This document shows positions 21,715 through 64,000 of a DNA stretch of 64,000 nucleotides, in pieces. Source of the DNA: Octopus sinensis (Eukaryota); NCBI RefSeq assembly GCF_006345805.1, contig NC_042997.1, positions 78,120,001 to 78,184,000 on the forward strand, in the 5' to 3' direction. Below the pieces are notes generated by a model that saw nothing but the letters and a program-made list of their open reading frames with translations, had not been told where the DNA came from and did no database searches. Position 1 is the first letter of the stretch. Each line of letters starts with the position of its first letter. Position numbers and translations under genes: made by a program.

Positions 21715-22150
<436 letters not shown>

Positions 22151-29200: not shown

Positions 29201-29278
29201 CAAACATTATTAATATTAATAATAATAATAATAACAATAACAACAACAACAACACCAACAACAATAATAATAATAATA

Positions 29279-29393
<115 letters not shown>

Positions 29394-29409
29394 GTATAAT
29401 AAAATAAAG

Positions 29410-31860: not shown

Positions 31861-31865
<5 letters not shown>
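29410..31865 (+). mobile_element. Young 5'-truncated R4/Dong-type LINE (RT + CCHC + restriction-like endonuclease; array copy 4)
   Basis: YRPITCL, DYKKAFDS, FQGDTLSP, YMDD, CRICG..HI..C, RHD and RPDIV. The frame is broken by a +1 in an A8 run (30475-30482) and a TAA at 31656-31658; the natural stop is at ~31766. Flanked by (AAT)n on both sides. Confidence 0.95.
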
Positions 31866-31917
<52 letters not shown>

Positions 31918-31918
<1 letters not shown>

Positions 31919-34150: not shown

Positions 34151-34205
34151 AAGACCGAACCTGAGCTAAACCAAAATGATGATGATGATGATGATGATGA
34201 TAATG

Positions 34206-34271
<66 letters not shown>

Positions 34272-34320
34272 TAATAATAATATTAATAATAATAATAATA
34301 ATATTAATAATAATAATAAT

Positions 34321-34351
<31 letters not shown>

Positions 34352-34398
34352 GCAACAACAGCAACAGCAACAGCAACAACAACAACAACAACAACAAT

Positions 34399-34481
<83 letters not shown>

Positions 34482-34483
<2 letters not shown>

Positions 34484-35735
34484 GATGCAATTTGGCCTCG
34501 ATAAATGTACGAAAGATACCTTTATCAAAGGAAAAATGACAGACACATTGAATGTTTACCTTGAACAGCAGAATGTCACAAAGGAGTTAGAACCAGCGGA
34601 GAGCTATAAATACGTTAGGGTATCAAACATTCAGGGATGAGGGAAAGGATCAGAAAAGAATGTTATCGCAGGGTAAGAGCAATACTCAAGACAGAGCTGA
34701 ATGCAAGAAACAGGATCGAAGCGATCAATAATTTAGCCATACCAGTCATGATTTACAGTTTCAATATCATTAACTGGTCAATTACTGAAATATGTAATCT
34801 TGACAGAAAGATACGAAAATTGTTGACAATGCATAGAATGCACCACCCTAAGGCAGATAGATATAGAACGACTTTACATCCCAAGAAAAGAGGGTGGTCG
34901 TGGACTTTTACAACTGGAATTAACAATGTAGATCGTTACAATTGGCCTAGATACCTACCTAAAAAAAAAACTCTGATGACTGGATGTTAAAACTTGTCTC
35001 AAAGCATTGAAAATTAGAAATCATCATACTCAGTAAAAAACCAGGCATACGAATATCTAAGTGAATTCCAAATACAACAAATTCTAGAGTTTGTACTAGA
35101 AACCAGCACAGAAAAAGTTAAGCGTATGAAAACCCGTGCTGAAACTACTCCTTAGATATTCTTACTGGTAAATGGCAAGGAAAAACTCTCAATGGCAAAT
35201 ACCCATTCAGGCCTAATAATGCCGGTCTTGTCAAAGCCTTTACCCATCGATTATTAGTGTCTTCTGACTTAAAATCAGAAACAGAAGGGTTTATCATAGC
35301 AGCTGAAGATCGATGCCTACCTACAAGAAACTACCAGGTAAACATATTAAAGAACGGTAGTAGCCCAACATGTCGTGTATGTCAACAATAAATAGAAATC
35401 ATTGATCATGTTGCTTCTATGTACAGTCTTCTTGTATCTCAAAAGGCATGATAGAGCAGCGCAATATATTCACTGGGTAATTTGCAAAAGCCTGGACCTG
35501 CCCCATGATAAAAACTGGTGAGAACACAAACCACCTCCAGTATCTGAAAATGATCTTCGCCATTCAAACTGACAGAAACACAGATGCGAATAGGCCAGAC
35601 ATTATATTGGAAGACTTCAGACCAAAAATCATGCATCCTCATTATTATGACTGTCCCAATCGTCATAAATGTAACTCTCAGGGCCTACTAAAAACGGAGC
35701 AAATATAACGATCTTGAAATAGCAAAAGTCAAACA
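34482..35735 (+). mobile_element. Decayed R4/Dong-type LINE 3' half (array copy 6)
   Basis: RERIRKECYRRVRAILKTELNARNRIEAINNLAIPV and RPDII; trinucleotide tail at 35735-35830. Confidence 0.85.
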
Positions 35736-37399: not shown

Positions 37400-39660
37400 G
37401 AGCGTAATGCGACGCAATAGATATTTTATTGGTTGAACGATATTTCCACAGCTAGCGAGTCTTTGTCGAGTTCAAAAGGATAAGTGATAAAAATTCAAAA
37501 TTATAGAAATTCAAATCCAAAATATGAACGAGAGCAACCAGCGTTGCACATTGATAGATTAACATAATCAGTCTGCAGATTTCAAGTTTACAATTGGCAA
37601 AGAGAAAAAGAAAGAAAAAAGAAAAGGAAAATTACATAAACAATTTTGCGTAATTATGATGAAATTCTGTCATTTTATTCATTCCTACAGAGTGTGGCAT
37701 TAATAACTCGCAAACATATTTCTCCTCATGAATTTTGAGTACTGAAAGTGTAGTAGATTCAGAATATTTTCTGAGAATATGCACTTTCAAGTCTATTTCA
37801 AATTGATGGAAAATGTTCAGCAAGTTCTGTCGAACTACTGTTATTGGTGCTTGATGCCATATCTGTCCATTGAATCTTTTGTTTAATTGTTCTGTTGTAC
37901 AACCAACATAAATCAAGTTGTCTTTGGTGCATTTTGCTGCGTACACCAATTGGGAATCTCGCCACGTCCCACTTTCCGTGTAAATCATAACATTTCCGTT
38001 ATGATTCCTGATGGAATTCACTTGACTCCTGTTGTTGCACAATGAACAGGGCTTACCTCTCTTACGGCTGTTTTTCAAGGTATAGCGTGCAGAAACTCCA
38101 ATGTTAGTTTTCTTGGAGTCAGAAGTAGAGGATAATAGTTCTCTTCTATTTTTATTCCATCTTAAGTCTACAATAGGCGTATGAAGAAATATATTTTTTT
38201 TGAAATGAGAATATTTTTCCGAAGCATAATGGTAACTGTCATGTAATACTTTTTGAAATGCCAGCGAAATTTCGGCGCCAGTTAATCACAAAAGGAATTC
38301 TGTCAGATATTGTACTTTGCCAAAATTATGAGTGAAAATTAGACTTTCTTTGCTAATCATAGCTATGTCATTTGCTATTTCCTTTAATCGTCATTCACTG
38401 TAACTGCAGTTGACATAATGGTGTACAACAGTATTTGCATATTTCCAGTAATCCCCAATGTCAGTACAAATCTATTTTATCCTAAAAAATTGGGATTTCG
38501 GATTTGACCGAATTATATGCGGATGATCGGAGCGGCGGTGGAGATAAAAGGGGAATAACGTGGGCTTGCAAAATAACTCTGTCGCTATTCTGCTTCCAGA
38601 AAACTTAACTTCTGTGACTAAAAATTCAAAGTCAGTTTTGAAAAACTGGACGTAAATTCTATGTTGGACTTAAAGCCATAGTTTTTAGCATAACTGTCAC
38701 AGAAATGCAAGAAGTCAATTAAGCTATCCTGTGATCCTTCCCAGGCAAAAAAGACGTCATCAATGAACCGTAACTAGAGTTTTGGTTCATCACCATGTAG
38801 GGATTTGAATGTCTTTAGTAACTGTGTCTCGAATTTCAGCATGAAGACATTAGCGAAATTAACTGCCATAGAGGTACACATGGCTGGTGGTAAAATTTTT
38901 GTGCAAATTTCATTGTGTTACTTGAAATTTAGATGAAATACTTTTGTTTGACCGTTTTTCGAAGGCATTCATGCATGCGTCTACCCCTTCATCATGATCA
39001 ATGTTGGGATATAAGGAAGAAACGTCCATGGTTACCAAAAAAACTGTTTAAAAAAGTGGTTGATTTTAGACACAAAATCAAAAGTATCCTGAATATAGGG
39101 ACTTGACCTTTTTGCGACAGGGAGTAGAAAGCCATCGAGTGTTCTTCTTTCTGACCTTAAAATCTTGGATTCGGCCCTATTAATGAAATTGTTTTCCTCC
39201 ATTTCCAGAATTATTTTGTCAAGTTCCTCCCTGTAATTGGGGTTTGGATCGACAGGTAATTCTTCATATGAAGTTTTATCACTTAAAACTTCTTCACAAG
39301 CCGAAATCTACTCACTCTTGTCCATAATTACAATAGCGCCTCCCTTATACGCCATTTATATAACAATAGAATCATTATTAACTATACGGCGGAGTGCGTA
39401 ACGTTGAGAACTTGTGAGGTTATACTAGGACTTCTTTCCACTTATTTTAAGGCTTTCCCCAATGCCTGTCTGACAAGATTCAAGCAATTCCAGTGGTGCT
39501 TGTGAACGCCCATCTCGAAATTTATCTGGACACCAACTGGAATTCTTTTCAACCCAATACTGCCAAATTCATCATTTTTATTTTCATCATCATCATTTTA
39601 TCAGTAAGCATAGTATTTTTTGACTGCTCGTACCATTTCTTTCAAAAAAAATTTTCCTTC
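37400..39660 (-). mobile_element. Penelope-like retroelement (RT + GIY-YIG endonuclease), decayed
   Basis: Minus strand: AYKGGAIVIMDK (PLE KPADKG..V motif), TSMAVNFANVFM and FIDDVF. ORF 37632-38078 carries CSLC, VYAAKC..IYVGCTT..L.KRF and E...GMN of GIY-YIG. A 3' region with AATAAA follows. Confidence 0.9.
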
Positions 39661-40670: not shown

Positions 40671-41073
40671 GGTGCAGGAGTGGCTGTGTGGTAAGTAGCT
40701 TGCTTACAAACCACATGGTTCTGGATTCAGTCCCACTGCATGGCACCTTGAGCAAGTGTCTTCTACTATAGCCTCGGGCCAACCAAAGCATTGTGAGTGG
40801 ATTTGGTTGATGGAAACTGAAAGAAGCGCGTCGTATATATGTATATGTATATATATGTATTTGTGTGTCTGTGTTTGTCCCCCCCCCAACATCGTTTGAC
40901 AACCGATGCTGGTGTGTTTATGTCCCCGTAAATTAGCGGTTCGGCAAAAGAGACCGATAGAATAAGTACTAAGGCTTACAAAGAATTAGTCCTGGGGTCG
41001 ATTTGCTCGACTAAAGGCGGTGCTCTAGCATGGCCGTAGTCAACTGACTGAAACAAGTAAAAGAGTAAAAGAG
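40671..41073 (+). mobile_element. Full-length tRNA-derived SINE (reference copy of the family in this window)
   Basis: Head GGTGCAGGAGTGGCTGTGTGGTAAG (A box) and GGATTCAGTCCC (B-box-like), internal (TA)/(TG) tract, and (GAGTAAAA)-type tail. Confidence 0.85.
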
Positions 41074-44900: not shown

Positions 44901-46091
44901 TCAGGTCATCCCATAAGTTTTGTCCGAATTTTGAATAAAGAAAGCAAGTGATCATATGTGATATTTAATTGGACTTTAATCATCAATGTACTTTCCCTGA
45001 TTATGTATGACTTCTTTCCATCTATATACAAGCTTTTAAATCCCATCAATGTAAAACTCTTTTAGTTTCGACCTCCTCCTGGCTTGCGAAAGTTATATGC
45101 CCCAAATGATTCTGCAAACTACTAAATAAAGAGTAGTATGAAGGAGCAAGGTCGGGAGAATAAGGAGGATGAGGAATTTTTTCCCAACCAAGCTCTTCGA
45201 TCTTCTGTGATGTGATCTTTGCAGTGTGGGGTCGCGCATTGTCCTAATGAAACATCAATCCTTTTCGATTCACTAAATAGGGTCTTTTTTTTCTTCAAAG
45301 CTTGGTTCAAACGCTCTAATTGCTGACAGTAGACTTGAGCATTGATTATTGCATTAGATGGTAACAATTCAAAGTGAATTACTCCCTTGCAATCCCACCA
45401 GATAAAGAGAAGAACCTTTTTCACATGAAGTTCCCTTCTCCGTTGTGGTTGAATATTTTCCCCTTTTACCAAACCACTGTTTATGACGTTTAACATTTCG
45501 ATAGAAGATCCATTTTTCGTCACCAGTCACAAGTCTATCCAAAAAGGGTGAAATGAGTTCGCGAGAATGGAGAGAAGAGCAGATGTCAACTCGGGATTTG
45601 CGGTTGCTTTAGGACAATTCATGAGGCACCCATTTTCTATGTTTAAGAACCTTTCCATTTGCCAATTCTTCAACTGATAATGCAGGATTTTCTTCAAGTA
45701 ATGCCTCAAGGAGCTTATCATCAAACTCAACTGGACGTCCTGTTCGATCTTCACCTTCAAGGCTGAAATCTCCACTACTGAACTTTGCAAACTCTCTTCT
45801 GCAAGTTCTTTCATACAAGCATTCTTTCCCATATGTGTATGTTTCGAGTCGCTTCGGCTGAAGAGTTTCCTTTCTTGTACTTATGAAATATTATTTGCTT
45901 CAAATGCTCTTTGGATATTTCCATATTAGAAAGGGTTTTAATTAAAGAAATTTTAATTCTATTATTCTGTAAAATAATATGTAATTAGTTTAAATGGAAT
46001 TTTTAATTCCATTAGACATTCTAAAATACTATTAAATTTCATTCAATTTAAAAAAAAGGTAATATCGGACAGAACTTATGGGATGACCTGA
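44901..46091 (-). mobile_element. Mariner element with a decayed transposase
   Basis: TIRs TCAGGTCATCCCATAAGTT.TGTCCGA at both ends with TA on each side. Transposase motifs WVPHELS, TGDEKW, WWDCKG and YSPDLAP; several frameshifts. Confidence 0.9.
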
Positions 46092-48029: not shown

Positions 48030-48877
48030 TTCTTTATCTTTTATCTTTTATGGGTGTACCGCTTTTACTGCATCCGGGGACTTTTTCAGTATTGCTTCTG
48101 GTGAAATAGCGAGTTGGACGTTGCCGCTCTTCTTTGTGCCTCCTGCCGAGATGCGGGTTCATCCGGTATTGCAGATAAAAACTGTTAGACGTTTTATGAA
48201 GACTTCCATATCTACACCTTGCCGATCTCTGATGTTCTGTGGTATGGCACTAAAAAGTTGTGGTCCCTTGAATCCCAAGCTATTACGACATTCGGTTTGT
48301 ATCCTCGATAGGGAAGATGGGACCTTTGGTACTGTGCTGTGCCGTCCAGTTCGGAGATTGTTGTAGATTTCGATTCCGAAATTTGGAGCTAGACCCTCCA
48401 TTATTTTCCATATGTATAGCACTGCATATCTGTCATGTCTCCTCTCCAGCGAGTAGAGTCCTAGTTCCTTCAACCTCTCCCAGTGGCCCAATGTTTTTTA
48501 CTGAGTCTATCTTCTTTGTGTAGTGGCGTTGGATCGCTTCTAGTTCCGCAATTAGTTTTGCACTCTGTGTGGACACAGCTGGGAGCAGTAGCCCAGACGA
48601 CTGAGGACAAATGTTCTCCAAAGCAGAAGCATTATATCTCTGTTCCTGGTCCTGAAGAATCTAAGGAACGAACTTGCCACCCGCCTGCATAGTGTTACCA
48701 TCTGAGCAATGTGCACATGGCATCGTTGTTCATGTAGATTACCAGGTCACGCACCGACTCTAACTCTGGGATTACGTTGGCTGCTGGTTCTGTGTACTTC
48801 AGCTGTAGTTTGTTTGTGGGCTGAAAGCGAAGTGCTTGAAATTTTGCGGCATTGAACTGCATATTATTACAGAGATC
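48030..48877 (-). mobile_element. 5'-truncated CR1-like LINE 3' end
   Basis: NNMQFNAAKFQAL, FVLSRLGYCSQL, WERLKELGLYSLERR and GPQLFSAIPQNIRD. Confidence 0.85.
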
Positions 48878-49042
48878 TAAACACACCAACATCGGTTGTC
48901 AAGCGATGGTGGTGTGACAAACAGAGACGCACAAACATATACATACACATACACAAACATACATACATACATACATACATACATCATACATACATACAAA
49001 CATATAATATATATATATATATATATATAATATATATATATA
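48878..49042 (-). mobile_element. Left half of a SINE split by the large insertion
   Basis: AAACACACCAACATCGGTTGTCAAGCGATG..GACAAAC then (CATA)n/(TA)n; colinear with the intact copies at 42790-42895 and 63795-63910. Confidence 0.85.
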
Positions 49043-49126
49043 ATAATAAATATTAGGGAATAAATCCAAATTTACAGGGAAAAATCAGATTTAGGATTAA
49101 ATCGATTTTATAGTAAAATATTATAA

Positions 49127-52100
49127 AATATTATTCGAGACAAAACCACTATTTTGCAAAACAAACAAGGAAAGACTTAATCAATACATAAATTTTAATA
49201 AATAGTCAAAAAAACCGCCACTACAATCGTTTCTTGTCTTGATCGACAATCTTCAGGTGGACTTCCAATCTAAAAAATCAATATTTTAAAAAATAAAATA
49301 ATTTTAAAATAATTAAAGTATGAATGAAAAAATATAAGTATATAATCCATATATAACCTATCTATAATCCATATATAATCAATATATAACAATATATAAA
49401 CTAAAAAAACCTATCAACAATTAAATATAAAATATAAAATATAAAATATAAAATATAAAATATAAAACAAAACAAAAAAAATAATAATAATATAATATTA
49501 AACTATATATACACCCATACGCATATACCTAATTATATATAACCATATCTAACTACATACACTAAATCACACACCTATATATATATCCCTATACATACAC
49601 ATAAAAATGTCTAGGCAACTATAAATAAATAAAATAGCTAAATACTTCAACACAATACTTATTCATACTCCCACACACACACATACAACCCACATTCACA
49701 CTCTAGAAAATGGACATCACTCAAAACTATGAACGGAGAAATAGAATAAATGGAATTAAAAATTATATTCACTTGGTAAAACGAACACTACTTAAAAATT
49801 ATGAATGAAACAATGCAATAAAACAACAGACATCGCAAATAGACACAAATTACTACAAATTCCTTATCAAACCTACCATGATAACCAAAACTCATAAAAA
49901 CATATAATGATAAAATCTCCCTTTACTAAACTCTATAACAAACCTATATAGCAATCCCCCTAACCTAAACATTCACACACAAATACACACACGTAAACTA
50001 CACACCCACGACATATACAAATACCCACACCACTTACACATACCAATACATACATATAAACCTCAACATATACTCCAAAACCCACTCAACCCCACACAGA
50101 CAAATAAACACAAAAATTATGAATGGATTCTTTTATAAAACTACCATGATAAGCTAAAACTCACAAAACAGAAATGATAAAACCTCCCTTTACTAAACAC
50201 TAAAACATACTTATATATCAATTCCTTTAACCAATACATTCACACACAAAACCACTCGTAAACCACACACCCATAACAAATACAAACTCCCACCCCACTC
50301 ACACACACCCACAAGTACATATAAGCCTCAACATATACACCAAACAAAATTACTTTACCAAGGAACTTAACATATATATAAAAAGTATAACCGCTCTGGA
50401 AACGAACATCTCTAAATTAATGAATGGAGAAATGGAAGAAATGGAATTAAAAATAAAATTCACGTGGCAAAAACGAACACCACTCAAAAATTATGAATGA
50501 AACAATATAATAAAACAACCAACATCGAAAAAAGACAAATTACTACGAATTCCCTAAAAAAAACCATGATAAACCAAAACTCTTAAAAAACATATAACGA
50601 TAAAATCTCCCTTTGCTAAACTCTATAACAAACCTATATAGTAATCCCCCAAACCTAAACATTCACACACAAACACACACGTAAACCACAGACCCACGAC
50701 TTATACACATACCTAAACTAACTTATAAACCTCCATATACACCAAAACCCACTCCCTCCCACACAGACAAATTAACTCATACATCCCAAAACCTAAATAA
50801 CAAACCCATATACACATTCACACACAAAACACACACACACGCAAAACACACACACACACAACAGATACATATATTCCCTCACATATACGCATATACATAC
50901 TCACTAAACTCAATATATACAACAATATTTACGCACCCACACTCATACAGATAAATAAATTATACAACTAAAAACTCGCACACAATCTCATATACATAAA
51001 CACTCCTATGAAAACAACATTAAATACATCTTAATTAACCAGAATATCAAAAATAACAATATGACATAAAGGTAAATAAAATACATACTTACAATTCAGT
51101 GTCAAATTATGAAGTGAAATTAAATTCTTAGCCGTTAAAAAATCAAACCAAAATTACGTTACCATAGAAATAACTTATGTAAAAAAGACTAACAAACAAC
51201 TTGCAGTAACCCAATCCCATTCTCTATGCCTACCTCACTACTACACTATTCCATTCACAATTCCAAACAACACTAGTCCACCTCCCGGTTATTAACGTGG
51301 CAAAACGAACACCACTCAAAAATTATGAATGAAACAATGTAATAAAACAACCAACATCGAAAATAGACAAATTACCACGAATTCCCTAAAAAAAACCATG
51401 ATAAACCAAAACTCCTAAAAACATATAACGATAAATCTCCCTTTGCTAAACTCTATAACAAACCTATATAGCAATCTCCCTAACCTAAACATTCACACAC
51501 AAAAACACACTCGTAAACCACAGACCCACGACTTATACACATACCTATACTAACTTATAAACCTCAATATACACCAAAACCCACTCCCTCCCACACAGAC
51601 AAATTAACACATACATCCCAAAACCTAAATAACAAACCCATATACACATTCACACACAAACACACACACACGCAAAGCACACCCACACAACAGATACATA
51701 TACTCCCTCACATATACGCATATACATACTCACTAAACTCGATATATACAACAATATTTACACACCCACAACTCATACAGATAAATAAATTATACAACTA
51801 AAAACTCGCACACATCTCATATACATAAACACACCTATGAAAACAACATTAAATACATCGTAATTAACCAGAATATCAAAAATAACAATATGACATAAGG
51901 ATAATAAAATACATACTTACAATTCAGTGTCAAATTATGAAGTGAAATTAAATTCTTAGCCGTAAAAAAACCAAACCAAAATTACGTTACCATAGAAATA
52001 ACTTATGTAAAAAAAGAATACGCGTCATGGAAAGTAAACGTCATTTAAATTATGAATGGAGAAATAGAAAAATGGAACTAAAAACTATATCCACGTGGCA

Positions 52101-53292
52101 AACCAACACTACTTAAAAAAATTATTATGAATGGATTCTTTAAAAAACTACCATGAAAAATCATTATATACATCTATGAGCTTTAGCTCACCTTAGCAGC
52201 TCTAACAAACAACTTGCAGTAACCCAAACCCATTCTCTATGCCTACCTCACTACTACACTATTCCATTCACAATTCCAAGCAACGCTAGTCCACCACCCG
52301 GTTATTCACGTGGCAAAACGAACACCACTCAAAAATTATGAATGAAACAATGTAATAAAACAACCAACATCGAAAATAGACAAATTACCACGAATTCCCT
52401 AAATAACCATGATAAACCAAAACTCATAAAAACATATAACGATAAAATCTCCCTTTGCTAAACTCTATAACAAACCTATATAGTAATCCCCCTAAACCTA
52501 AACATTCACACACAAATACACACTCGTAAACCACAGACCCACGACTTATACACATACCTATCCTAATTTATAAACCTCAATATACACCAAAACCCACTCC
52601 CTCCCCACACAGACAAATAACACAAACATCCCAAAACCTAAATAACAAACCCATATACACATTCACACACAAACCCACACACACACAAAAAACACACACA
52701 CACACAACAGATACATATACTCCCTCACATATACTCATATATATACTCACTACACTCGATATATACAACAATATTTACACACCCATACTCATACAGATAA
52801 ATAAAATATACAACTAAAAACTCACACACAATCTCATATACATAAACACTCCTATGAAAACAACATTAAATACATCGTAATAACCAGAATATCAAAAATA
52901 ACAATATGACATAAGGATAAATAAAATACATACTACAAGTCAATTTCAAATAATGAAGTGAAATTAAATTCTTAGCCGTTAAAAAAACCAAACCAAAATT
53001 ACGTTACCATAAAATAACTTATGTAAGAAAAAGAGAGAATACGCGCCATAGAAATTAAACGTCATTTAAATTATGAATGGAGAAATAGAATAAATGGAAC
53101 TAAAAACTATATCCACGTAGCAAACCAACACTACGTAAAAAAATTTAAAATGAATGGATTCTTTAACAAACTACCATGAAAAATCATTATATACATTTAT
53201 GAGCTTTAGCTCACCCTAGCAGCTCTAACAAACAACCTACAGCAAACCAAACCTATTCCCAATTCCTACCTCACTACCACACTAATCAATTC
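49127..53292 (-). repeat. Left arm of a ~4.17-kb inverted repeat (PLE-like terminal repeat with internal tandem units)
   Basis: Reverse complement of 59259-63425 wherever checked (49141 pairs with 63411; 53292 pairs with 59259). This arm has an extra ~84 bp outward (49043-49126) and ~120 bp inward. Confidence 0.95.
49218..49260 (-). ncRNA. Minimal type I hammerhead ribozyme motif
   Basis: The minus strand reads CCAC-CTGAAGA-TTGTC(GATCAA)GACAA-GAAA-C(GATT)G-TA-GTGG: stem I 4 bp, intact CUGANGA and GAAA core, perfect 5-bp stem II, 2-bp stem III, and a GUA cleavage triplet. Confidence 0.8.
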
Positions 53293-53417
53293 CCAATTCC
53301 AAACAACGCTAATCCACCACCCGGTTACAATTCCCAACTCCACCCATTCATTACAATTTCAACGACATTCGCCTCCACACCCTACGCTACTTATAAGCCT
53401 CAACATATACACCGGAG

Positions 53418-53719
53418 ATACACTTACACATCCGTGCGGATGGGTGAGAGTATACATTGAGTGTGGTGATAGGGCTCCCATTACTATACACATTTGTACC
53501 TGTGTGGTAGTCTCCATGTGTATATTACGCACGGGTATAAATGCAGGGGGTACATGCGCACGTCATTTGCGTGTACCCCTCACATGTACATATGCATGCT
53601 ATTAGGGCTCGATATATGCAACAATGTAATCGCGCCCGCATACATGCATATGGGCGAATTGCACAATCAAAAAACGCACACGTGTGTGTGTGCGTTCCCT
53701 GGTTGTGCAATTCACCCAT
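53418..53719 (+). other. Block of five consecutive imperfect hairpins between the left arm and the HERC1 fragment
   Basis: Manual pairing: 53418-53453, 53461-53490, 53491-53543, 53546-53580 and 53589-53652, plus a nested stem at 53650-53719. Most imperfections are G-U on the + strand. Confidence 0.8.
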
Positions 53720-53744
53720 CTGGGTGTGAGTGGGTGTAATCTTA

Positions 53745-56700
53745 TCACTGTGGTGGAATCGGTCTGTTCCACCTCATCGATCTTCTCCATCAGTTCATTC
53801 TTGCGTGCCAGGGTTTGTTGATTGGCAAGTACAACTGGTACAAACCACATGTGTTGAGCCATATCATGAAACAATCGCTGGACAATTGTATCGAAATAAT
53901 CTCGATCCAGATCTTTAGGACATGCAGGGAGGATAACAGCCAGTAAGTGTAGCGCGATAAGACGAGTTCTCAGACTGCTGATTAATGGTAAACCTTTCTC
54001 GGAAAATTTTCCTGCGATATCAAGAAGCACACTGGTCCATTTTTTACAAGCCAAACGTGACTGGACAGGAACTGAAGCAGCAATTCTTCTAAGGAACACT
54101 AAGAAGTCACCAATAGCTATTTGGCTGGGACAGGATTCTTGCTGTATATCTTTCTCTTGAGAAACAGCTGAAGACAAGAGTTTTTCCAGTTGTTTCCACA
54201 GTAAATCCACAACATTCTGGATGACACCATCACTTAGTCTCTCGGCATACATCCCGGTGCCAACGGCAACGATTTGCAGAAGGTGTTGACAGCCCAGCTG
54301 GAGCATGTTGTTCAGCTGGAGGGAATTCAAGGCAGTTGGTGGTATCTGCATGGTGAGGGACACAGTGTGAGCATTCTCGCTGAGGCAGTAGAGGAGGGGG
54401 AGCAGCTGACCACAGGACACAGCAAGGGACAGGTCAGCTGGACAATACTTGTTGCTCATGGACAGCACAGTGGACAGGAGCAGCTTCTGCTTGGTGCTTT
54501 CCTCCAGTGTTTTAGATTTTGATGTCGTGACCAATGCCCCGACAAGCAGCTCATAGATTCGGTGGACTGCTAACTGCACCTCTTGTTGGCTTTGGGCTCG
54601 CGCCGCCTTGATCCCATCCTGATAGTGACTTCCGTCAGGCAGAGCTGATGTTGTTTCAAATGGTAAAGAACTCAATCCGAAGCAACCAGACAGGAACTGG
54701 AGATGGACAGAACTAAGTAGAGTGGTCAGTGTAAAATCTTCAGGTGAGCTGGTGTTGCTGTCCTGACTGTCAACACTGGACTGGCGATTGTTAGATGTTT
54801 TATCTTTCTCTGTGGACAACAACTCAACTATTTGGTGCAGTGAGTCAACACGTGATTGTGCCCTCTCTTGCTGATGTTCAAGGGATTTAGCAAAATATAT
54901 CTGATACATAATATGTTCGCCGCACACAAAGTGGAAAATGTCCAACATCAATTCTTTGATGCACAGCTTCCGACAGGTGTGATGTTCGTTCTCTTCGCCA
55001 AAGTATCCAGGTGTAATGTCACCAACACGTTCTTGGCGCCACCGGAGACGGCGCAAGATTTCTTTCACTTTCTGTAAGGATTCCATGCTGGTGTTTTCTC
55101 CTGAGAGAGGTGTAGCCGTACCATTGCATTGTGCAGCTGTGTAGCGCAAACCTCCATTGCCAGTGTTCTCGCTACCAGTTTAAGTTTCCCCGTTTGACTC
55201 CTCAATGTCATTCAAACAACAAAGGTTCGGAGAGCTACTTGTCCGTGTTACGGATTTCTTGTTCTTCCTCGGTGACAAATAAAGCCGTCTCTCTGTATTG
55301 TGGTCTTGTGCTACGTGGGACCGACTGCCGTAGATTGTATCAGACAAAACAAGCTCTTCATCTGCTAAAGGTTGTCTTACTCCGATAATAAGAAACACAC
55401 ATCTTTCTAACCAGGTGCGACAGATATCTTCAAAGGAACTGTCACCAGGAGATTCTTTCAACTTAGCATTGCTAGAATTATCAGCTTCATCTTTTATTTT
55501 CTCGAGTCCTTCGTCACTTTTGCCAGCTTCCCTGATGTCTTCCTCTTCCGATAAGCCATGGCCTCGTTTATGTGTTGTTATTCTGTCCGAATGTAAAAGT
55601 CCAGAGAATTTGGGGGCCTGATTCGGAGACAATTTATATCCAATAAGTCGACTGCGTGATTGATAAACCAGTCTATAAGCCATCACAAGACTGCGATTGG
55701 GTCTCTCTGTGGATTGGGAAAAGGAGAGGAGGTCACAGTGTTTCAGTAACGCTGCTAGCAAGAACCTGGATATTGTATCTAGGGAGACATCTTTCATTTC
55801 ACATGTATCCCAATCTTTTTTCTCAGCATACTCAAACATCATCCGTTGTACATGTTGCACCGGTTCCTTTGGAATGCCAAGACCAAGTTCCAGTAGGAAT
55901 ATGGTATCGGCATCGAAGTTGAGATCCTCGGGAATGTTCGCTTCGGAGGGTTTCGACGACAGAATCGAACACATACTGTCATGGATGATCAAATCTAATT
56001 CAGAAGCTTGTCTTTCAAGGCCATTGCTAAACAAACGACTGTCAAGCCACGTCGTATTGACTTTCTCTGAACTGGACAAAGGAGGACCAAGTAATAGAGC
56101 ATGTAATGACCGACCAACCAAGAGTGAACATGACCTTTCTAGGTCAAGTAGCCACGACCACTGGGATACAGCTGGACACTGAGATTCAGGTAGATCTGAG
56201 AGGTGGGGGTATTCTTCGATAATTTGGTAAGCTAAGAGGTTACGGTTGATTTTATCAAGGCATGGCAGGAAGTTGAGTAGATCATGCAACAATGGGGTGA
56301 GTGCTGAATGCTGAGGGAGTAACAACAGAGCGTAGATGACATGAACCAACATAGCGCCGGCAGGGGAATCAAACAGGATTTCTCCAACTTTCTTCAAAAG
56401 TGACGCGTTATCTTGTATATCTGCTATCATGTGGGAACAGCAGGTGATAATTTCTCCAGATAGTGGCAACATGAGAGACAAATGACGGTGGAGCACTGAA
56501 CTGGCACTGGACATGTCATTATTTTCTGAATTGTTGCGACAATAAGCTAGCAAATGTTTGTGCAAGGATGACAATAAGCTGTGCAGATGGCGTGGAGGGG
56601 AGCTGTTATCGACACACAGCAGTTGTAAAGCTTTATCACTGTTCTTCTTAATTTCATTCAAAGCTTGTACAGTATGGAAAGTGAGAGTCCTTAACACGGT

Positions 56701-59258
56701 TTTCATTAACACTTCTGCTAGTTCAACATCCATTGTGTTGTCATAGTCTGGACTGGCAGAAACGGTAGAATCGAAAGGCTCAGCAAATCCAAGAAGGGAT
56801 GCGATGTGAGAATTGTCTTGGAGACTGGCAAGAATGATGTCAAGTTGCATACGCTGGCCTCTAGATAGTGTGTCCCATCTATCACTGCCTTGTGGAAGCA
56901 GGGAATGAAGTAGTTCCATCCTCTCCTTTAATGGTGGTAACAATAATGGTGCTCCAATTGATAAAGTCTCTATCACAGCCTGTTGTACTGATGGGGGGGG
57001 TGTCGATATCTAGCAGTCGAAAGAGCAGATTACGGAATGGTCGAGAATGATCTCCAAGTATTCCCTTTGAGACTCCACTAGCTTGAGCAAGGGACAGATG
57101 AGTCCCCAGAATATTCAGACACAACTGAATGAAATGACAATGATCTTGTTTGGTGGTGAAAGGCGGTGGTGGTGCAGACCCATTGACGTCATCACAATAG
57201 TGTTCAAGAAATGTATGCAGTAAGAGAAAGGTGGATTCTTGTAAGTCGACACAGAATGGCCGATTCCATGCAATAACATTCCTGTCGGTGGGTAGAGCTG
57301 TCCATGCTATACTGTGTGATGTTCCTGCTGATATCTGGTGAATACTAACTCCATCCAACCCGATAACCTTCTTTGGCTTAGAGATGGGGCTGTGAGCGTG
57401 TCCTTGGCCACACTGACCCATTGTGTTGTTGCCCCAGGCATACACCTCATTCTCATGTGTGAGAGCCAAACAATGCGTATCACCACAAGCTATATCAGCA
57501 ATGCAGGTACTCTGGAACTCTTCTATCTGTCGAGGCCGCAGTGCAGTGTACTCAGGGGAGCCACACCCTAAACATGAACCGCACCCCCACGCATACACCT
57601 GTCCAGAAGATGTCAATGCTAACGAAGACTGCGTCCCACAAACGACTTTCCGGATGTAAAACTCAGTGAAAGTTTCAATGATTTTTGGCTTATAGAGGCG
57701 ATTGGTGTCTCCATGTCCCAACTTTCCATTATCTCCGCCGCCAAACGACCAAACTGTTTTACCATCTTGGGACACAGCAATGGTGTGTGAACTGCCACAG
57801 GCTACCTGGCCGACTCCAGAAACATCTTTGATGCATGTTGGTACGTTCTTACTGTTGCTGTCACCATGTCCCAATCGTCCATAATCTCCATCACCACAGG
57901 TGTACAGTTCTCCATCTTCAGTCACAAAGGCACTATGACGATGACCAGCAGACACACACTTGACCGCTTTGCCACTCAATGGTCCTTGAATCAGTTTGGG
58001 ATATTTCTGGGACACTGTGTTTCCATGTCCAAGTTTACCGTAGTCGCCATCTCCCCAACTGAAAACCTGTCCATCTGTTGACATTGCTAAACTGTGACCA
58101 TCTGATCCTTTGGATGACGAGATCTTTTTAATTTGAGATTTCGGGTCAAAGGTCAGCTTCTTTGGGACGGCCTGGTTGCTGGAATCTCCAAGCCCCAAAC
58201 GCCCATAACTTCCTTTACCACAGGCAGCTACTGATCCTTCATTGTGGACAACAAACGTGCAAAACTGGCCAGCTTCAATCTGTTGACAATCTCCAAAAGC
58301 TGATGTTAATTTCGGAGTGGTCACCTTCTCCTGGCTGCCCGCCCCCAGCTGGTGGCTGCTATTACTGCCCCACACATACACCTCACAGTTGGCACCAAAT
58401 ACAGATGAGTTACCTTCTGTATTGCGGTTTTCATCGGGACTCATGCACGTACTTGCATAATGCACAGCCAAGTGGTAAACCTGTTCCATCAGGTACATGG
58501 CAGCATCATACAAAGAAATCAATCCATTCTCGTCTTTTGTGGGTTTTTTCTTTACAGCAAGGAACTTATCAGCGCCACCAACGGACTGAACCATCTGCTG
58601 GATTATATCCATGAAGAAATCGTAATGGATGTTTGTCGATCTCTGGGAATGGTCATCAGATTTCATGGAAGCAGCATAAGCTTGCAGGGCGACCTCCACC
58701 CACTCTAACAGATAGCGTAAAGATCCCCTCTGGGCGGCCAATGCTAACATGAGTTCAGCAGCCAGCTGTTGACCGACCAAGTTAGCACTGGACGCTGGTC
58801 CGATTGTACTCCGCAGGAAGTTGGTCACTTGATTTAAGGTCTCCATCCCGAGTGGCGTGACCTTTATCTCATTAGCAAGGGACAGTGGGGGTAGTTTGGT
58901 GACGACGTCAACGGCTGTTTGGAAGACGTCATCGCATAAGCAAACGTTGTCAATATGAGGGGCAAGGATCCAATTCTGTCTCAGTAATGAGAACAACAAA
59001 CTCAACCCGGTCTTAATGCCCATTTCAATAAGAACCTCAGAACCACATTTTGTCTTATCCCCAGCAAACTTGCCATTGTCATTTGTTTTGTCAGCATCTA
59101 ACGACGGCTCTTCAATGTTGCTTTTGTTCTGGTCATGATATTTGCTTGATACAGCCGAATAGATTCGTTGTAAAACAGCAAGTCGCTTTTGTAAAGATTT
59201 TGTAAAAGGCGAAGTCAAACATATAGTCTCTGCTAAAACTTTCTGGCAACCCAGGAGA
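53745..59258 (-). pseudogene. HERC1: Intronless HERC1 coding fragment (roughly human residues ~90-2000: N-terminal region, RCC1-like domain 1 and central region), lacking start codon, SPRY, WD40, RLD2 and HECT
   Basis: LIEMGIKTGLSLLFSLLRQNW, LPPLSLANE, LAAQRGSLRYLLEW, RCC1 repeats (GDGDYGKLGHG etc.) and LLPPLKERMELLHSLLPQG match HERC1 as I recall it. ORFs 56882-59218, 55180-56976 and 53602-55149 join into one frame after one +1 in a G8 run (56993-57000) and one in-frame TAA (55180-55182). No introns over 5.5 kb. Confidence 0.9.
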
Positions 59259-62200
59259 GAATTGATTAGTGTGGTAGTGAGGTAGGAATTGGGAATAGGT
59301 TTGGTTTGCTGTAGGTTGTTTGTTAGAGCTGCTAGGGTGAGCTAAAGCTCATAAATGTATATAATGATTTTTCATGGTAGTTTGTTAAAGAATCCATTCA
59401 TTTTAAATTTTTTTACGTAGTGTTGGTTTGCTACGTGGATATAGTTTTTAGTTCCATTTATTCTATTTCTCCATTCATAATTTAAATGACGTTTAATTTC
59501 TATGGCGCGTATTCTCTCTTTTTCTTACATAAGTTATTTTATGGTAACGTAATTTTGGTTTGGTTTTTTTAACGGCTAAGAATTTAATTTCACTTCATTA
59601 TTTGAAATTGACTTGTAGTATGTATTTTATTTATCCTTATGTCATATTGTTATTTTGATATTCTGGTTAATTACGATGTATTTAATGTTGTTTTCATAGG
59701 AGTGTTTATGTATATGAGATTGTGTGTGAGTTTTTAGTTGTATATTTTATTTATCTGTATGAGTATGGGTGTGTAAATATTGTTGTATATATCGAGTGTA
59801 GTGAGTATATATATGAGTATATGTGAGGGAGTATATGTATCTGTTGTGTGTGTGTGTGTTTTTTGTGTGTGTGTGGGTTTGTGTGTGAATGTGTATATGG
59901 GTTTGTTATTTAGGTTTTGGGATGTTTGTGTTAATTTGTCTGTGTGGGGAGGGAGTGGGTTTTGGTGTATATTGAGGTTTATAAATTAGGATAGGTATGT
60001 GTATAAGTCGTGGGTCTGTGGTTTACGAGTGTGTATTTGTGTGTGAATGTTTAGGTTTAAGGGGATTACTATATAGGTTTGTTATAGAGTTTAGCAAAGG
60101 GAGATTTTATCGTTATATGTTTTTATGAGTTTTGGTTTATCATGGTTATTTAGGGAATTCGTGGTAATTTGTCTATTTTCGATGTTGGTTGTTTTATTAC
60201 ATTGTTTCATTCATAATTTTTGAGTGGTGTTCGTTTTGCCACGTGAATAACCGGGTGGTGGACTAGCGTTGCTTGGAATTGTGAATGGAATAGTGTAGTA
60301 GTGAGGTAGGCATAGAGAATGGGTTTGGGTTACTGCAAGTTGTTTGTTAGAGCTGCTAAGGTGAGCTAAAGCTCATAGATGTATATAATGATTTTTCATG
60401 GTAGTTTTTTAAAGAATCCATTCATAATAATTTTTTTAAGTAGTGTTGGTTTGCCACGTGGATATAGTTTTTAGTTCCATTTTTCTATTTCTCCATTCAT
60501 AATTTAAATGACGTTTACTTTCCATGACGCGTATTCTTTTTTTACATAAGTTATTTCTATGGTAACGTAATTTTGGTTTGATTTTTTTAACGGCTAAGAA
60601 TTTAATTTCACTTCATAATTTGACACTGAATTGTAAGTATGTATTTTATTTATCCTTATGTCATATTGTTATTTTTGATATTCTGGTTAATTACGATGTA
60701 TTTAATGTTGTTTTCATAGGTGTGTTTATGTATATGAGATGTGTGCGAGTTTTTAGTTGTATAATTTATTTATCTGTATGAGTTGTGGGTGTGTAAATAT
60801 TGTTGTATATATCGAGTTTAGTGAGTATGTATATGCGTATATGTGAGGGAGTATATGTATCTGTTGTGTGGGTGTGCTTTGCGTGTGTGTGTGTTTGTGT
60901 GTGAATGTGTATATGGGTTTGTTATTTAGGTTTTGGGATGTATGTGTTAATTTGTCTGTATGGGAGGGAGTGGGTTTTGGTGTATATTGAGGTTTATAAG
61001 TTAGTATAGGTATGTGTATAAGTCGTGGGTCTGTGGTTTACGAGTGTGTTTTTGTGTGTGAATGTTTAGGTTAGGGAGATTGCTATATAGGTTTGTTATA
61101 GAGTTTAGCAAAGGGAGATTTATCGTTATATGTTTTTAGGAGTTTTGGTTTATCATGGTTTTTTTAGGGAATTCGTGGTAATTTGTCTATTTTCGATGTT
61201 GGTTGTTTTATTACATTGTTTCATTCATAATTTTTGAGTGGTGTTCGTTTTGCCACGTTAATAACCGGAGGTGGACTAGTGTTGTTTGGAATTGTGAATG
61301 GAATAGTGTAGTAGTGAGGTAGGCATAGAGAATGGGATTGGGTTACTGCAAGTTGTTTGTTAGTCTTTTTTACATAAGTTATTTCTATGGTAACGTAATT
61401 TTGGTTTGATTTTTTAACGGCTAAGAATTTAATTTCACTTCATAATTTGACACTGAATTGTAAGTATGTATTTTATTTACCTTTATGTCATATTGTTATT
61501 TTTGATATTCTGGTTAATTAAGATGTATTTAATGTTGTTTTCATAGGAGTGTTTATGTATATGAGATTGTGTGCGAGTTTTTAGTTGTATAATTTATTTA
61601 TCTGTATGAGTGTGGGTGCGTAAATATTGTTGTATATATTGAGTTTAGTGAGTATGTATATGCGTATATGTGAGGGAGTATATGTATCTGTTGTGTGTGT
61701 GTGTGTTTTGCGTGTGTGTGTGTTTGTGTGTGAATGTGTATATGGGTTTGTTATTTAGGTTTTGGGATGTATGAGTTAATTTGTCTGTGTGGGAGGGAGT
61801 GGGTTTTGGTGTATATGGAGGTTTATAAGTTAGTTTAGGTATGTGTATAAGTCGTGGGTCTGTGGTTTACGTGTGTGTTTGTGTGTGAATGTTTAGGTTT
61901 GGGGGATTACTATATAGGTTTGTTATAGAGTTTAGCAAAGGGAGATTTTATCGTTATATGTTTTTTAAGAGTTTTGGTTTATCATGGTTTTTTTAGGGAA
62001 TTCGTAGTAATTTGTCTTTTTTCGATGTTGGTTGTTTTATCATATTGTTTCATTCATAATTTTTGAGTGGTGTTCGTTTTTGCCACGTGAATTTTATTTT
62101 TAATTCCATTTCTTCCATTTCTCCATTCATTAATTTAGAGATGTTCGTTTCCAGAGCGGTTATACTTTTTATATATATGTTAAGTTCCTTGGTAAGTAAT

Positions 62201-63425
62201 TTTGTTTGGTGTATATGTTGAGGCTTATATGTACTTGTGGGTGTGTGTGAGTGGGGTGGGAGTTTGTATTTGTTATGGGTGTGTGGTTTACGAGTGGTTT
62301 TGTGTGTGAATGTATTGGTTAAAGGAATTGATATATAAGTATGTTTTAGTGTTTAGTAAAGGGAGGTTTTATCATTTCTGTTTTGTGAGTTTTAGCTTAT
62401 CATGGTAGTTTTATAAAAGAATCCATTCATAATTTTTGTGTTTATTTGTCTGTGTGGGGTTGAGTGGGTTTTGGAGTATATGTTGAGGTTTATATGTATG
62501 TATTGGTATGTGTAAGTGGTGTGGGTATTTGTATATGTCGTGGGTGTGTAGTTTACGTGTGTGTATTTGTGTGTGAATGTTTAGGTTAGGGGGATTGCTA
62601 TATAGGTTTGTTATAGAGTTTAGTAAAGGGAGATTTTATCATTATATGTTTTTATGAGTTTTGGTTATCATGGTAGGTTTGATAAGGAATTTGTAGTAAT
62701 TTGTGTCTATTTGCGATGTCTGTTGTTTTATTGCATTGTTTCATTCATAATTTTTAAGTAGTGTTCGTTTTACCAAGTGAATATAATTTTTAATTCCATT
62801 TATTCTATTTCTCCGTTCATAGTTTTGAGTGATGTCCATTTTCTAGAGTGTGAATATGGGTTGTATGTGTGTGTGTGTGGGAGTATGAATAAGTATTGTG
62901 TTGAAGTATTTAGCTATTTTATTTATTTATAGTTGCCTAGACATTTTTATGTGTATGTATAGGGATATATATATAGGTGTGTGATTTAGTGTATGTAGTT
63001 AGATATGGTTATATATAATTAGGTATATGCGTATGGGTGTATATATAGTTTAATATTATATTATTATTATTTTTTTTGTTTTGTTTTATATTTTATATTT
63101 TATATTTTATATTTTATATTTTATATTTAATTGTTGATAGGTTTTTTTAGTTTATATATTGTTTATATATTGATTATATATGGATTATAGATAGGTTATA
63201 TATGGATTATATACTTATATTTTTTCATTCATACTTTAATTATTTTAAAATTATTTTATTTTTTAAAATATTGATTTTTTAGATTGGAAGTCCACCTGAA
63301 GATTGCCGATCAAGACAAGAAACGATTGTAGTGGCGGTTTTTTTGACTATTTATTAAAATTTATGTATTGATTAAGTCTTTCCTTGTTTGTTTTGCAAAA
63401 TAGTGGTTTTGTCTCGAATAATATT
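59259..63425 (+). repeat. Right arm of the ~4.17-kb inverted repeat
   Basis: Reverse complement of 49127-53292 with scattered single-base differences. Confidence 0.95.
63292..63334 (+). ncRNA. Minimal type I hammerhead ribozyme motif (second copy)
   Basis: CCAC-CTGAAGA-TTGCC(GATCAA)GACAA-GAAA-C(GATT)G-TA-GTGG; a T>C change at 63306 creates one mismatch in stem II. Confidence 0.75.
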
Positions 63426-63427
63426 GT

Positions 63428-63476
<49 letters not shown>

Positions 63477-63603
63477 CGACAGGCTTCTTTCAGTTTCCAT
63501 CTACCAAATCCACACGCAAAGCTTTGGTCGGCCCGTGGCTATAGTAGAAGACACCCAATATAGTTGGGAAGCAAGCTTCTTTCCACACAGCCACGCCTCT
63601 GCC

Positions 63604-63644: not shown

Positions 63645-63850
63645 TTTTATTCTTTTATTTGTTTCAGACATTTGACTGCGGCCATGCTAGAGCACCGCCT
63701 TTAGTCGAACAAATCGACCCCAGGACATATTCTTTGTAAGCCTAGTACTTATTCTATCGGTATCTTATGCCGGACCGGTAAGTTACGGGGATGTAAACAC
63801 ACCAACATCAGTTGTCAAGTGATGCTGGAGGTACAAATACAAACACACAA

Positions 63851-63911
<61 letters not shown>

Positions 63912-64000
63912 CTACGGGCTTCTTTCAGTTTCCGTCTACCAATCCACTCACAAGGCTTTGGTCAGCCCGAGACTATAGTAGAAAACACTTGCCCAGTGTG
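63645..64000 (-). mobile_element. tRNA-derived SINE, reverse orientation, running off the window end
   Basis: Colinear with 42648-43045. Confidence 0.85.

What the first reader, a model, noticed from the sequence alone, without database searches (positions are those of the whole stretch)
53745..59258. HERC1 retrocopy truncated at BOTH ends, with no poly(A) tail
Seen: ~1,840 codons of HERC1 without introns, starting mid-codon series at S-L-L-G-C-Q and stopping just before the expected SPRY domain, fused directly to element sequence on both sides. Established: vertebrate HERC1 is a very large multi-exon gene, and LINE-made processed pseudogenes normally keep the mRNA 3' end and poly(A). Inference: an internal mRNA slice is better explained by RT template switching onto and off a spliced mRNA than by ordinary poly(A)-primed retroposition. 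PLEs are known for retaining introns, so a fully spliced cargo is informative about where the RNA was picked up.
Basis: partly seen in the sequence, partly recalled or inferred. Interest (0 to 1): 0.78.

Follow-up and report, generated by a model that had tools for sequence, protein, structure and literature searches.

The report
Spliced HERC1 slice inside hairpin-shaped insertion
A young, intron-free copy of the middle of the HERC1 messenger RNA sits in the loop of a 14.4 kb hairpin-shaped insertion, which is a clear but single example of host RNA being copied into DNA by a route other than ordinary poly(A)-primed retroposition.

Summary
Window 59258-53745 (minus strand) carries 1,833 collinear HERC1 codons (about residues 78-1990). 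None of the at least 28 introns found in a limpet HERC1 is present. Five of those positions are also seen in closer relatives' genomic contigs. There is no poly(A). The only defects are one +1 C in a C8 run and one TAA, so the copy is young (under about 2% neutral divergence).

The flanks are the two arms of a 4.18 kb inverted repeat that is 99.4% identical. The arms are built of roughly 0.8-1 kb tandem units of a strand-asymmetric repeat (6% G). The whole 14.4 kb unit, which has a 76 bp one-sided tail, is an insertion into the (TA)n tract of one SINE-like repeat.

Template switching is plausible. Both HERC1 ends lie inside exons in the limpet, the 5' junction has 2-5 nt of microhomology, and a 33 bp snap-back hairpin lies 23 nt from the 3' junction. 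It is not proven. A foldback-type palindrome patched with a cDNA fragment fits almost as well. No PLE hallmark (RT/GIY-YIG, hammerhead) lies in the insert. Only PLE-like architecture is present.

Verdict: real, RNA-derived, and a new variant of known RNA-templated insertions. Interest is moderate. The parental gene and other copies could not be examined.

The parts
48867..49051 (-). 3' half of a SINE-like repeat split by the insertion, including its (TGTA)n/(TA)n tract
   Evidence: This flank matches positions that directly follow the right-flank match in intact copies at 21748-22005, 40756-40931 and 63988-63783.
49052..49127 (.). 76 bp unique 'tail', present only at the left end of the insertion
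   Evidence: It is not part of the SINE and not part of the inverted repeat. It is unique within the window.
49118..53292 (.). Left arm of the inverted repeat: outer unique part, then degenerate units, then units of 833, 1013 and about 1023 bp. The + strand is G-depleted.
   Evidence: 4,184-nt alignment to 63436-59259 at 99.4-99.5% identity, with 7 transitions and about 13 one-base indels in short runs. Unit map. Composition A47 C24 G6 T23.
53293..53744 (.). Unpaired continuation of the repeat ('spacer'): the next partial unit, with normal base composition from about 53415 onward
   Evidence: 53293-53327 continues the tandem register. 53381-53695 aligns to unit positions 51544-51826 with 54 G/A and 15 T/C differences, nearly all in one direction.
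53647..53722 (.). 33 bp near-perfect hairpin (local snap-back), 23 nt from the HERC1 3' junction
   Evidence: Folding energy -60.2 kcal/mol, z = -8.4, 0 of 200 shuffles as stable. 29 Watson-Crick pairs and 4 G.T pairs.
53745..59258 (-). Intronless copy of HERC1 codons about 78-1990 (N-terminal region, RLD1, long linker; ends about 55 residues before SPRY)
   Evidence: Exon-block matches in relatives. Patella exon map.
56993..57000 (-). C8 run carrying the only frameshift (+1 C)
   Evidence: Removing one C restores TPPSVQQAVIETLSIGA, identical to the relative L001. It is the only homopolymer of 7 nt or more in the copy. It may be a read error.
55180..55182 (-). The only in-frame stop (TAA), in an unconserved linker
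59259..63436 (.). Right arm of the inverted repeat. Its inner end abuts HERC1 with 2-5 nt of possible microhomology (..CAATTC / AAT TCT).
63437..63554 (-). 5' half of the same split SINE-like repeat, ending in (TA)n

Best explanation
A single complex RNA-templated insertion. The inserted strand (the + strand) starts at a break in the (TA)n tract of a SINE.

Step 1: it runs through a strand-asymmetric tandem repeat from that repeat's defined end (49128) inward to about 53686.

Step 3: it switched onto a mature, spliced HERC1 mRNA at about codon 1990 and copied it back to codon 78.

Step 4: it switched again at a short microhomology (AATTC/TC) onto the repeat copy it had already made, at 53292.

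Step 5: it copied that repeat back to its end. This made the second arm, which is therefore a near-perfect reverse complement with exactly the same outer terminus.

Step 6: the end was joined to the other side of the break.

Shown: the HERC1 segment is spliced, internal and young; the arms are near-identical and share one terminus; the unit is an insertion into a SINE; there is a snap-back hairpin and short microhomology.

Inferred: the order of the steps, that one polymerase (an RT from a LINE or PLE, of which decayed copies lie in the window) did all of them, and that the repeat template was RNA.
For: Spliced origin.

Both ends internal to Patella exons, and no poly(A).

Youth of both parts: one stop against 2.5 expected per 1% neutral divergence, and arm-to-arm substitution divergence of 7/4,180.

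Insertion status: the flanks are adjacent halves of one SINE-like repeat.

Asymmetry: the repeat continues in register past the inverted-repeat boundary on the HERC1 3' side only. HERC1 is therefore colinear with the longer arm, as one growing strand would be.

Local fold-back: a 33 bp hairpin lies next to the junction.

Microhomology at the other junction.

Identical outer ends of both arms.

Derived arm differences fall mostly in the right arm (4-5 of 6; not significant).

RT template jumps that make multipartite chimeras, and PLE-type inverted/tandem insertions with one-sided tails in (TA)n, are documented (PMC2104539, PMC8557442, PMC3846280).
Against: No RT gene, poly(A), target-site duplication or other signature ties any particular retroelement to the event.

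The repeat has no demonstrated RNA stage.

A fold-back that lands 6 kb upstream and then copies 4.2 kb is unusually long for snap-back synthesis.

The same final structure can arise by DNA-level routes.

The parental mRNA sequence is unknown, so the length of the microhomology and the exact 3' junction are uncertain.

Only one locus was seen.
Confidence: 0.42

Rival explanations
1. A foldback-type DNA element, or a pre-existing palindrome, whose centre broke and was patched. [quoted passage not shown] Long palindromes are prone to breakage at the centre. The break was repaired by end joining that captured a free HERC1 cDNA fragment, in the manner of a class 2 templated sequence insertion.
For: The arms are 4.18 kb long, internally tandem-repetitive, have one shared precise terminus and encode nothing. 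This is the architecture described for Foldback, Galileo and Tetris (PMC4079207, PMC3573991). cDNA patches with several spliced exons, no poly(A), no TSD and microhomology are known at repaired breaks (PMC5110952). HERC1 sits exactly at the inner end of one arm.
Against: The 76 bp one-sided tail between the target (TA)n and the left terminus is not expected for cut-and-paste insertion. No transposase and no other copy lies in 64 kb. 5.5 kb is very long for a captured cDNA patch. The snap-back hairpin next to the junction points to polymerase switching rather than simple ligation.
Confidence: 0.3
2. Secondary truncation or DNA-level capture. In this reading a conventional, longer HERC1 processed pseudogene, here or elsewhere, was later cut down. 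The cause would be the rearrangement or duplication that made the inverted repeat, or a DNA copy of part of that pseudogene being moved in.
For: Nothing in the window excludes it. The 3' side is followed by a complex junction (hairpin plus 22 unassigned nt), and tandem repeats are recombinogenic.
Against: The HERC1 copy and the arm pair are both very young, so two separate events would have to fall within a short time. The whole unit behaves as one insertion into a SINE. No further HERC1 sequence lies in the window.
Confidence: 0.13
3. Assembly or library artefact: a chimeric or foldback long read, or cDNA contamination, built into the contig.
For: The arms differ mainly by one-base indels in short runs, and the only frameshift is in a C8 run. 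The assembly therefore carries long-read-type errors. Foldback reads exist in long-read data and can tangle assemblies (PMC12870357).
Against: A foldback read mirrors everything up to the read end. Here the inverted repeat stops at a defined terminus, and the two outer flanks are the two halves of one SINE in direct orientation, which is the signature of a true insertion. The arms differ by 7 substitutions. The loop is 6 kb and asymmetric.
Confidence: 0.07
4. It is part of the working HERC1 gene: a giant intron-poor exon flanked by repeat-rich introns.
For: The reading frame is long and shows codon-position conservation typical of a functional gene.
Against: There is an in-frame stop and a frameshift. 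The copy starts and ends inside Patella exons, and its borders are repeat junctions rather than exon boundaries seen in relatives. There is no other HERC1 exon within 64 kb. All intron positions known in relatives are empty.
Confidence: 0.02

Closest known systems
Class 2 templated sequence insertions (cDNA patches at repaired double-strand breaks; Onozawa et al., reviewed in PMC5110952)
   Same: RNA-derived with several spliced exons. No poly(A) tract or signal. Not anchored at the mRNA 3' end. Short microhomology at a junction.
   Different: Those patches are short and lie directly in unique DNA. Here the slice is 5.5 kb and lies in the loop of a 4.18 kb inverted repeat that came in with it.
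Multipartite chimeric retrocopies made by template jumps during LINE reverse transcription (for example the tripartite pseudogene of Magnaporthe, PMC2104539; L1 chimeras, PMC13174262)
   Same: Copies of different RNAs are fused head to tail in one orientation. They are explained by RT switching from one template to another.
   Different: Those chimeras end in a LINE or poly(A) 3' part and have TSDs. Here there is no LINE part, the mRNA was entered and left internally, and the last switch is a fold-back.
Penelope-like element insertions, including host genes mobilised in trans (PMC8557442, PMC3846280)
   Same: Partial tandems plus an inverted copy that frames the whole unit. An extension at one end only. 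Preference for (TA)n/AT-rich simple repeats. A host gene between the repeats.
   Different: The insert has no RT/GIY-YIG ORF, no hammerhead and no direct pLTR pair around the cargo. The arms are 4 kb rather than about 0.2 kb. The cargo is spliced, whereas published PLE cargo kept its introns.
Foldback / Galileo / Tetris DNA transposons (PMC4079207, PMC3573991)
   Same: Long terminal inverted repeats made of internal tandem repeats, with a non-coding body and heterologous loop content.
   Different: No TSD could be read. There is an extra one-sided tail and no second copy in the window. A spliced mRNA slice as loop content has not been described, to my knowledge.

Membership tests
LINE-made processed pseudogene (class 1 retrocopy) | No introns at positions where the parental gene has them | tested here: met
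   Five intron positions seen in closer relatives' contigs, and at least 28 in Patella, are empty in the window. The parental gene of the same species was not available.
LINE-made processed pseudogene (class 1 retrocopy) | Keeps the mRNA 3' end and a poly(A) tail | tested here: not met
   The copy ends at about residue 1990 of about 4,800. There is no A-run or poly(A) signal within 500 nt.
LINE-made processed pseudogene (class 1 retrocopy) | Target-site duplication flanking the copy | tested here: inconclusive
   The copy is flanked by repeat arms. The whole unit lies in a (TA)n tract, where a TSD cannot be read.
Class 2 templated sequence insertion (cDNA patch) | RNA-derived (spliced) insert without poly(A), poly(A) signal or TSD | tested here: met
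   The TSD part of the criterion is unreadable here.
Class 2 templated sequence insertion (cDNA patch) | End-joining marks at both junctions (microhomology, filler) | tested here: inconclusive
   2-5 nt of possible microhomology at the 5' junction. There are 22 unassigned nt plus a hairpin at the 3' junction. The parental sequence is needed.
Penelope-like element insertion | ORF with RT and GIY-YIG endonuclease (or at least element-derived sequence) | tested here: not met
   No ORF of 150 aa or more lies in the arms. The only GIY-YIG-like ORF is at 37632-38078 (E = 0.0019, below the Pfam cut-off) and shares no sequence with the arms.
Penelope-like element insertion | Hammerhead ribozyme in the terminal repeats (canonical clades) | tested here: not met
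   No Rfam hit at gathering score or at E<=1. There is no CUGANGA core in the arms apart from one isolated heptamer. Naiad-type PLEs also lack it (PMC8557442).
Penelope-like element insertion | Tandem/inverted copies framing the unit, a one-sided tail, and a (TA)n target | tested here: met
   The tail is 76 bp rather than 30-40 bp, and the arms are 4.18 kb.
Foldback-type DNA transposon | Long terminal inverted repeats with internal tandem repeats and identical termini | tested here: met
Foldback-type DNA transposon | A family of copies with the same termini and TSDs of fixed length | not testable with these tools
   There is no second copy in the window. A 32-nt arm motif was not found in metagenome contigs.
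HERC1 gene (functional locus) | Complete architecture: RLD1, SPRY, WD40, RLD2, HECT, in an open frame | tested here: not met
   Only residues about 78-1990 are present, with one stop and one frameshift. For comparison, the fish protein carries the full domain set.

The most novel reading that the evidence does not exclude
One reverse-transcriptase run produced the whole 14.4 kb hairpin. A cDNA of a non-coding tandem-repeat RNA jumped into the interior of a spliced HERC1 mRNA. It then folded back 6 kb and copied 4.2 kb of itself. The one-directional G/A and T/C differences between the innermost repeat unit and the arms would then be deaminase editing (A-to-I and/or C-to-U) of the nucleic-acid intermediate, fixed in germline DNA. 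If so, this locus is a natural record of long-range fold-back synthesis and of edited RNA being written back into a genome.
Probability: 0.2. Interest if true: 0.72.

Novelty: new variant of a known kind. Interest (0 to 1): 0.45.

Why it matters
Internal, poly(A)-less slices of spliced mRNAs in genomes are the footprints of RNA-templated repair or of RT template switching. Both processes are known mainly from short human inserts and from LINE chimeras.

This locus is unusually large (5.5 kb of mRNA) and unusually informative. It preserves both junctions, a local snap-back, a 4.2 kb fold-back copy and the empty-site context (a split SINE).

If the same genome shows that the arms come from a retroelement, this would be a worked example of how such elements pick up mature host mRNA and build long palindromes. 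Long palindromes are themselves sources of instability and of hairpin RNA.

If instead the arms are a foldback transposon family, the locus shows cDNA capture stabilising a palindrome centre.

Either way it creates no working gene.

Tried and rejected
1. Finding the parental HERC1 of the same species failed. The length filter of the homologue search excludes full-length HERC1 when pieces are used as queries, and stops must not be read through. Exon-sized queries found only distant relatives: at most 90-92% amino-acid and 75-84% nucleotide identity, with third codon positions 43-61% identical.

2. Exact look-up of six window ORFs found none in the collection.

3. Identifying the organism through the LINE RT gave a best hit of only 55-60%, with no named close relative. 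My impression that the flanking SINE-like repeat is the abundant Octopus SINE rests on memory only and was not tested.

4. A scan of metagenome contigs for a 32-nt arm motif gave 0 hits.

5. Rfam, tRNA and hammerhead searches of the arms found nothing.

6. A search for an unmutated parent of the arms elsewhere in the window, using a three-letter alphabet, gave only low-complexity noise outside the spacer.

7. A link between the arms and the PLE-like GIY-YIG fragment was not found.

8. A neighbour-preference test for ADAR-like editing gave a trend in the expected direction that was not significant (p=0.12).

9. Polarising the arm differences gave 4-5 derived changes in the right arm against 1 in the left. 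This is not significant.

10. PDB sequence searches confirmed only the RCC1-like domain. The two other pieces have no solved relative.
Full report
**1. What is there**

On the minus strand, three long ORFs lie at 59218..56882, 56976..55180 and 55149..53602. They form one collinear HERC1 reading frame.

- The first piece has a complete RCC1-like propeller (Pfam WD40_RLD 6e-133, RCC1 4e-85). Its best solved relative is a HERC1 RCC1-like-domain entry in the PDB.
- Its best named relatives are N-terminal HERC1 fragments of fish, limpet, dog whelk and zebra mussel at 52-60% identity, with E-values from 0 down to 6e-253.
- tblastn with six HERC1 proteins is collinear from residue about 78 (window 59266-59269) to fish residue 1988 (window 53797).
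- The middle piece, which has no Pfam domain, finds HERC1 of coelacanth, fish and Patella at the expected positions, about 850-1340.
- In the fish protein the Pfam SPRY match begins at residue 2045.

The exact count is 1,833 codons.

**2. It is spliced**

Genomic contigs of relatives match the window only in exon-sized blocks:

- L001 carries three exons separated by introns of about 470 and 556 bp.
- L005, L009 and L015 each add further exon blocks.
- The blocks map to window 57454-57281, 57284-57147, 57145-56979, 56982-56854, 56855-56669 and 56173-56010.
- Most of the blocks are bordered by canonical AG/GT in the relatives, while the window is uninterrupted.

The annotated HERC1 of Patella caerulea (GCA_036850965.1) has 22 exons for residues 1-1353. 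Downstream DNA holds at least seven further exon blocks up to the end of the slice. Its intron positions coincide with those in the closer relatives. At least 28 intron positions are therefore empty in the window.

Identity to the relatives is 84-95% at first codon positions, 93-100% at second positions and 43-61% at third positions. That is the pattern of a sequence that spent its history as a working gene. It also shows that these relatives are distant.

**3. It is young and only lightly damaged**

- The only frameshift is one extra C in a C8 run. This is the single homopolymer of 7 nt or more in the slice, and it lies 20 nt upstream of an exon junction. Removing one C restores a peptide identical to the relative's.
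- The two repeat arms also differ mostly by one-base indels in short runs. The frameshift may therefore be a read error.
- The only stop is a TAA in an unconserved linker.
- Random substitutions would give 2.5 stops per 1% divergence. One stop implies at most about 2% neutral divergence.

**4. Both ends are internal, and there is no poly(A)**

- Residue 78 lies inside Patella exon 1 (residues 1-274).
- The 3' end lies inside the Patella exon that continues into SPRY.
- No A-run or poly(A) signal follows the 3' end.

**5.

*The inverted repeat.* The flanks are the two arms of an inverted repeat, 49118-53292 and 59259-63436. The alignment covers 4,184 nt at 99.4-99.5% identity, with 7 transitions, no transversions in the body, and about 13 one-base indels.

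*Arm structure.* Each arm has three zones:

- an outer unique part;
- degenerate units at 81-83% identity;
- three inner tandem units of 833, 1013 and about 1023 bp at 93-95% identity.

*Composition.* One strand is A47 C24 G6 T23.

*Termini.* Both arms end outward at the same sequence, AATATTATTCGAGAC.

*Asymmetry.* On the HERC1 3' side only, the repeat continues past the inverted-repeat boundary (53293-53744).

*Insertion into a SINE.* Outside the arms, the right flank (63437-63554) and the left flank (48867-49051) match adjacent halves of one SINE-like repeat. Intact copies of this repeat lie at 21748-22005, 40756-40931 and 63988-63783. The break is in its internal (TA)n/(TG)n tract. A unique 76 bp tail (49052-49127) lies between the target and the left arm only.

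The whole 14.4 kb hairpin-shaped unit is therefore a discrete insertion. This argues strongly against a foldback-read artefact, which would mirror the flank as well (PMC12870357).

**6. Junction details**

- At the 5' junction the shared arm sequence ends ..CAATTC. HERC1 reads AAT TCT (N-S, and Patella also has N-S here). So 2-5 nt can be assigned to either partner.
- At the 3' side, 23 nt from HERC1, lies a 33 bp near-perfect hairpin at 53647-53722. Its folding energy is -60 kcal/mol and z = -8.4. In effect the repeat strand turns back on itself before HERC1 begins.

**7. Mechanism**

The strand that contains the longer arm, the spacer, the snap-back, antisense HERC1 and then the second arm can be read as one growing DNA strand that changed template four times. 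The last change was a fold-back onto its own first 4.2 kb.

This reading explains several features at once:

- why the arms are near-identical;
- why they share one terminus;
- why one arm is longer;
- why HERC1 has neither mRNA end;
- why the junctions show a snap-back and microhomology.

RTs are known to do each of these things on a smaller scale (PMC2104539, PMC3846280). Decayed LINE RT and PLE endonuclease fragments lie in the window.

I rate this model at 0.42. The main rival, at 0.30, is a foldback-type palindromic element whose centre was broken and patched with a HERC1 cDNA fragment, as in class 2 templated insertions (PMC5110952; PMC4079207; PMC3573991). The one-sided tail, the snap-back and the 5.5 kb size lean against the rival. 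The lack of any RT signature leans against my preferred model. Secondary truncation of a longer retrocopy (0.13), an artefact (0.07) and a genuine exon (0.02) are less likely.

**8. PLE question**

The architecture resembles published PLE insertions. It has inverted plus tandem copies, a one-sided tail and a (TA)n target (PMC8557442, PMC3846280). However, no defining PLE feature was found in the insert. Published PLE cargo retained its introns, and this cargo is spliced. The structure may work like a PLE-type insertion, but it cannot be filed as one.

**9. An unexplained extra**

The innermost partial unit (53381-53695) is clearly homologous to the arm units. The alignment score is 155, against 31±4 for shuffles and at most 82 for other low-complexity segments.

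It differs from the arm units by 54 G(spacer)/A(arm) and 15 T/C changes, with only 1 and 3 changes in the opposite directions. The arm units differ among themselves by an ordinary mix of changes. The composition switch lies at about 53415, inside a unit.

There are two possible readings:

- The arms descend from a unit that was almost completely C>T (and A>G) deaminated on the HERC1-sense strand.
- The spacer is an A>G hyper-edited copy. In this reading 45% of the A positions changed, and the 5'-neighbour trend T≈A>C>G has p=0.12.

I could not decide between them.

**10. Verdict**

The locus is real, RNA-derived, and not an ordinary processed pseudogene. It is a new variant of known RNA-templated insertions, embedded in an unusual long palindrome. 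Interest is moderate, because this is a single locus and the decisive same-genome comparisons could not be made here.

Noticed in passing
window 49118-53292 and 59259-63436 versus 53381-53695: The repeat arms are 6% G on one strand. The innermost, unpaired partial unit has normal composition. It differs from the arm units almost only by one-directional G/A (54) and T/C (15) changes. This looks like a deaminase-type hypermutation or hyperediting footprint whose direction is unresolved.
   Followed up: partly
window 53647-53722: A 33 bp near-perfect hairpin (-60 kcal/mol, z = -8.4, four G.T pairs) lies 23 nt from the HERC1 3' junction. It gave weak, sub-threshold miRNA-like Rfam hits only.
   Followed up: yes
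window 48867-49051 and 63437-63554; intact copies at 21748-22005, 40756-40931, 63783-63988: A SINE-like repeat with an internal (TA)n(TG)n tract occurs at least five times in the window. One copy is split by the 14.4 kb insertion. From memory only, it resembles the abundant SINE of Octopus genomes. This was not tested.
   Followed up: partly
window 49052-49127: [quoted passage not shown] It recalls the one-sided 'tail' described for PLE insertions, but it is twice as long.
   Followed up: partly
window 28289-35726 (ORFs 29537-30493, 30648-31658, 33063-33894): Nested or tandem fragments of a non-LTR retrotransposon (Pfam RVT_1 2e-33 and zf-RVT). The segments 28289-28850 and 35164-35726 are 79% identical. 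The best database relatives are only 55-60% identical.
   Followed up: no
window 37632-38078 (-): An ORF with a CxxC motif and a weak GIY-YIG match (E = 0.0019, below the Pfam cut-off). It is probably a decayed Penelope-like endonuclease fragment and is unrelated in sequence to the repeat arms.
   Followed up: partly
window 45122-45832 (-): A decayed mariner-type transposase fragment (Pfam Transposase_1, 3e-22).
   Followed up: no
window 49388-52894 (arm differences) and 56993-57000: Nearly all indel differences between the two arms, and the only frameshift in HERC1, lie in short homopolymer or dinucleotide runs. This suggests residual long-read errors in the assembly.
   Followed up: partly
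window 49246-52492 / 63306-60060: All 7 substitutions between the arms are transitions. Of the 6 that can be polarised with paralogous units, 4-5 are derived in the right arm. That arm is the one that would be the fold-back copy. The result is not significant.
   Followed up: yes
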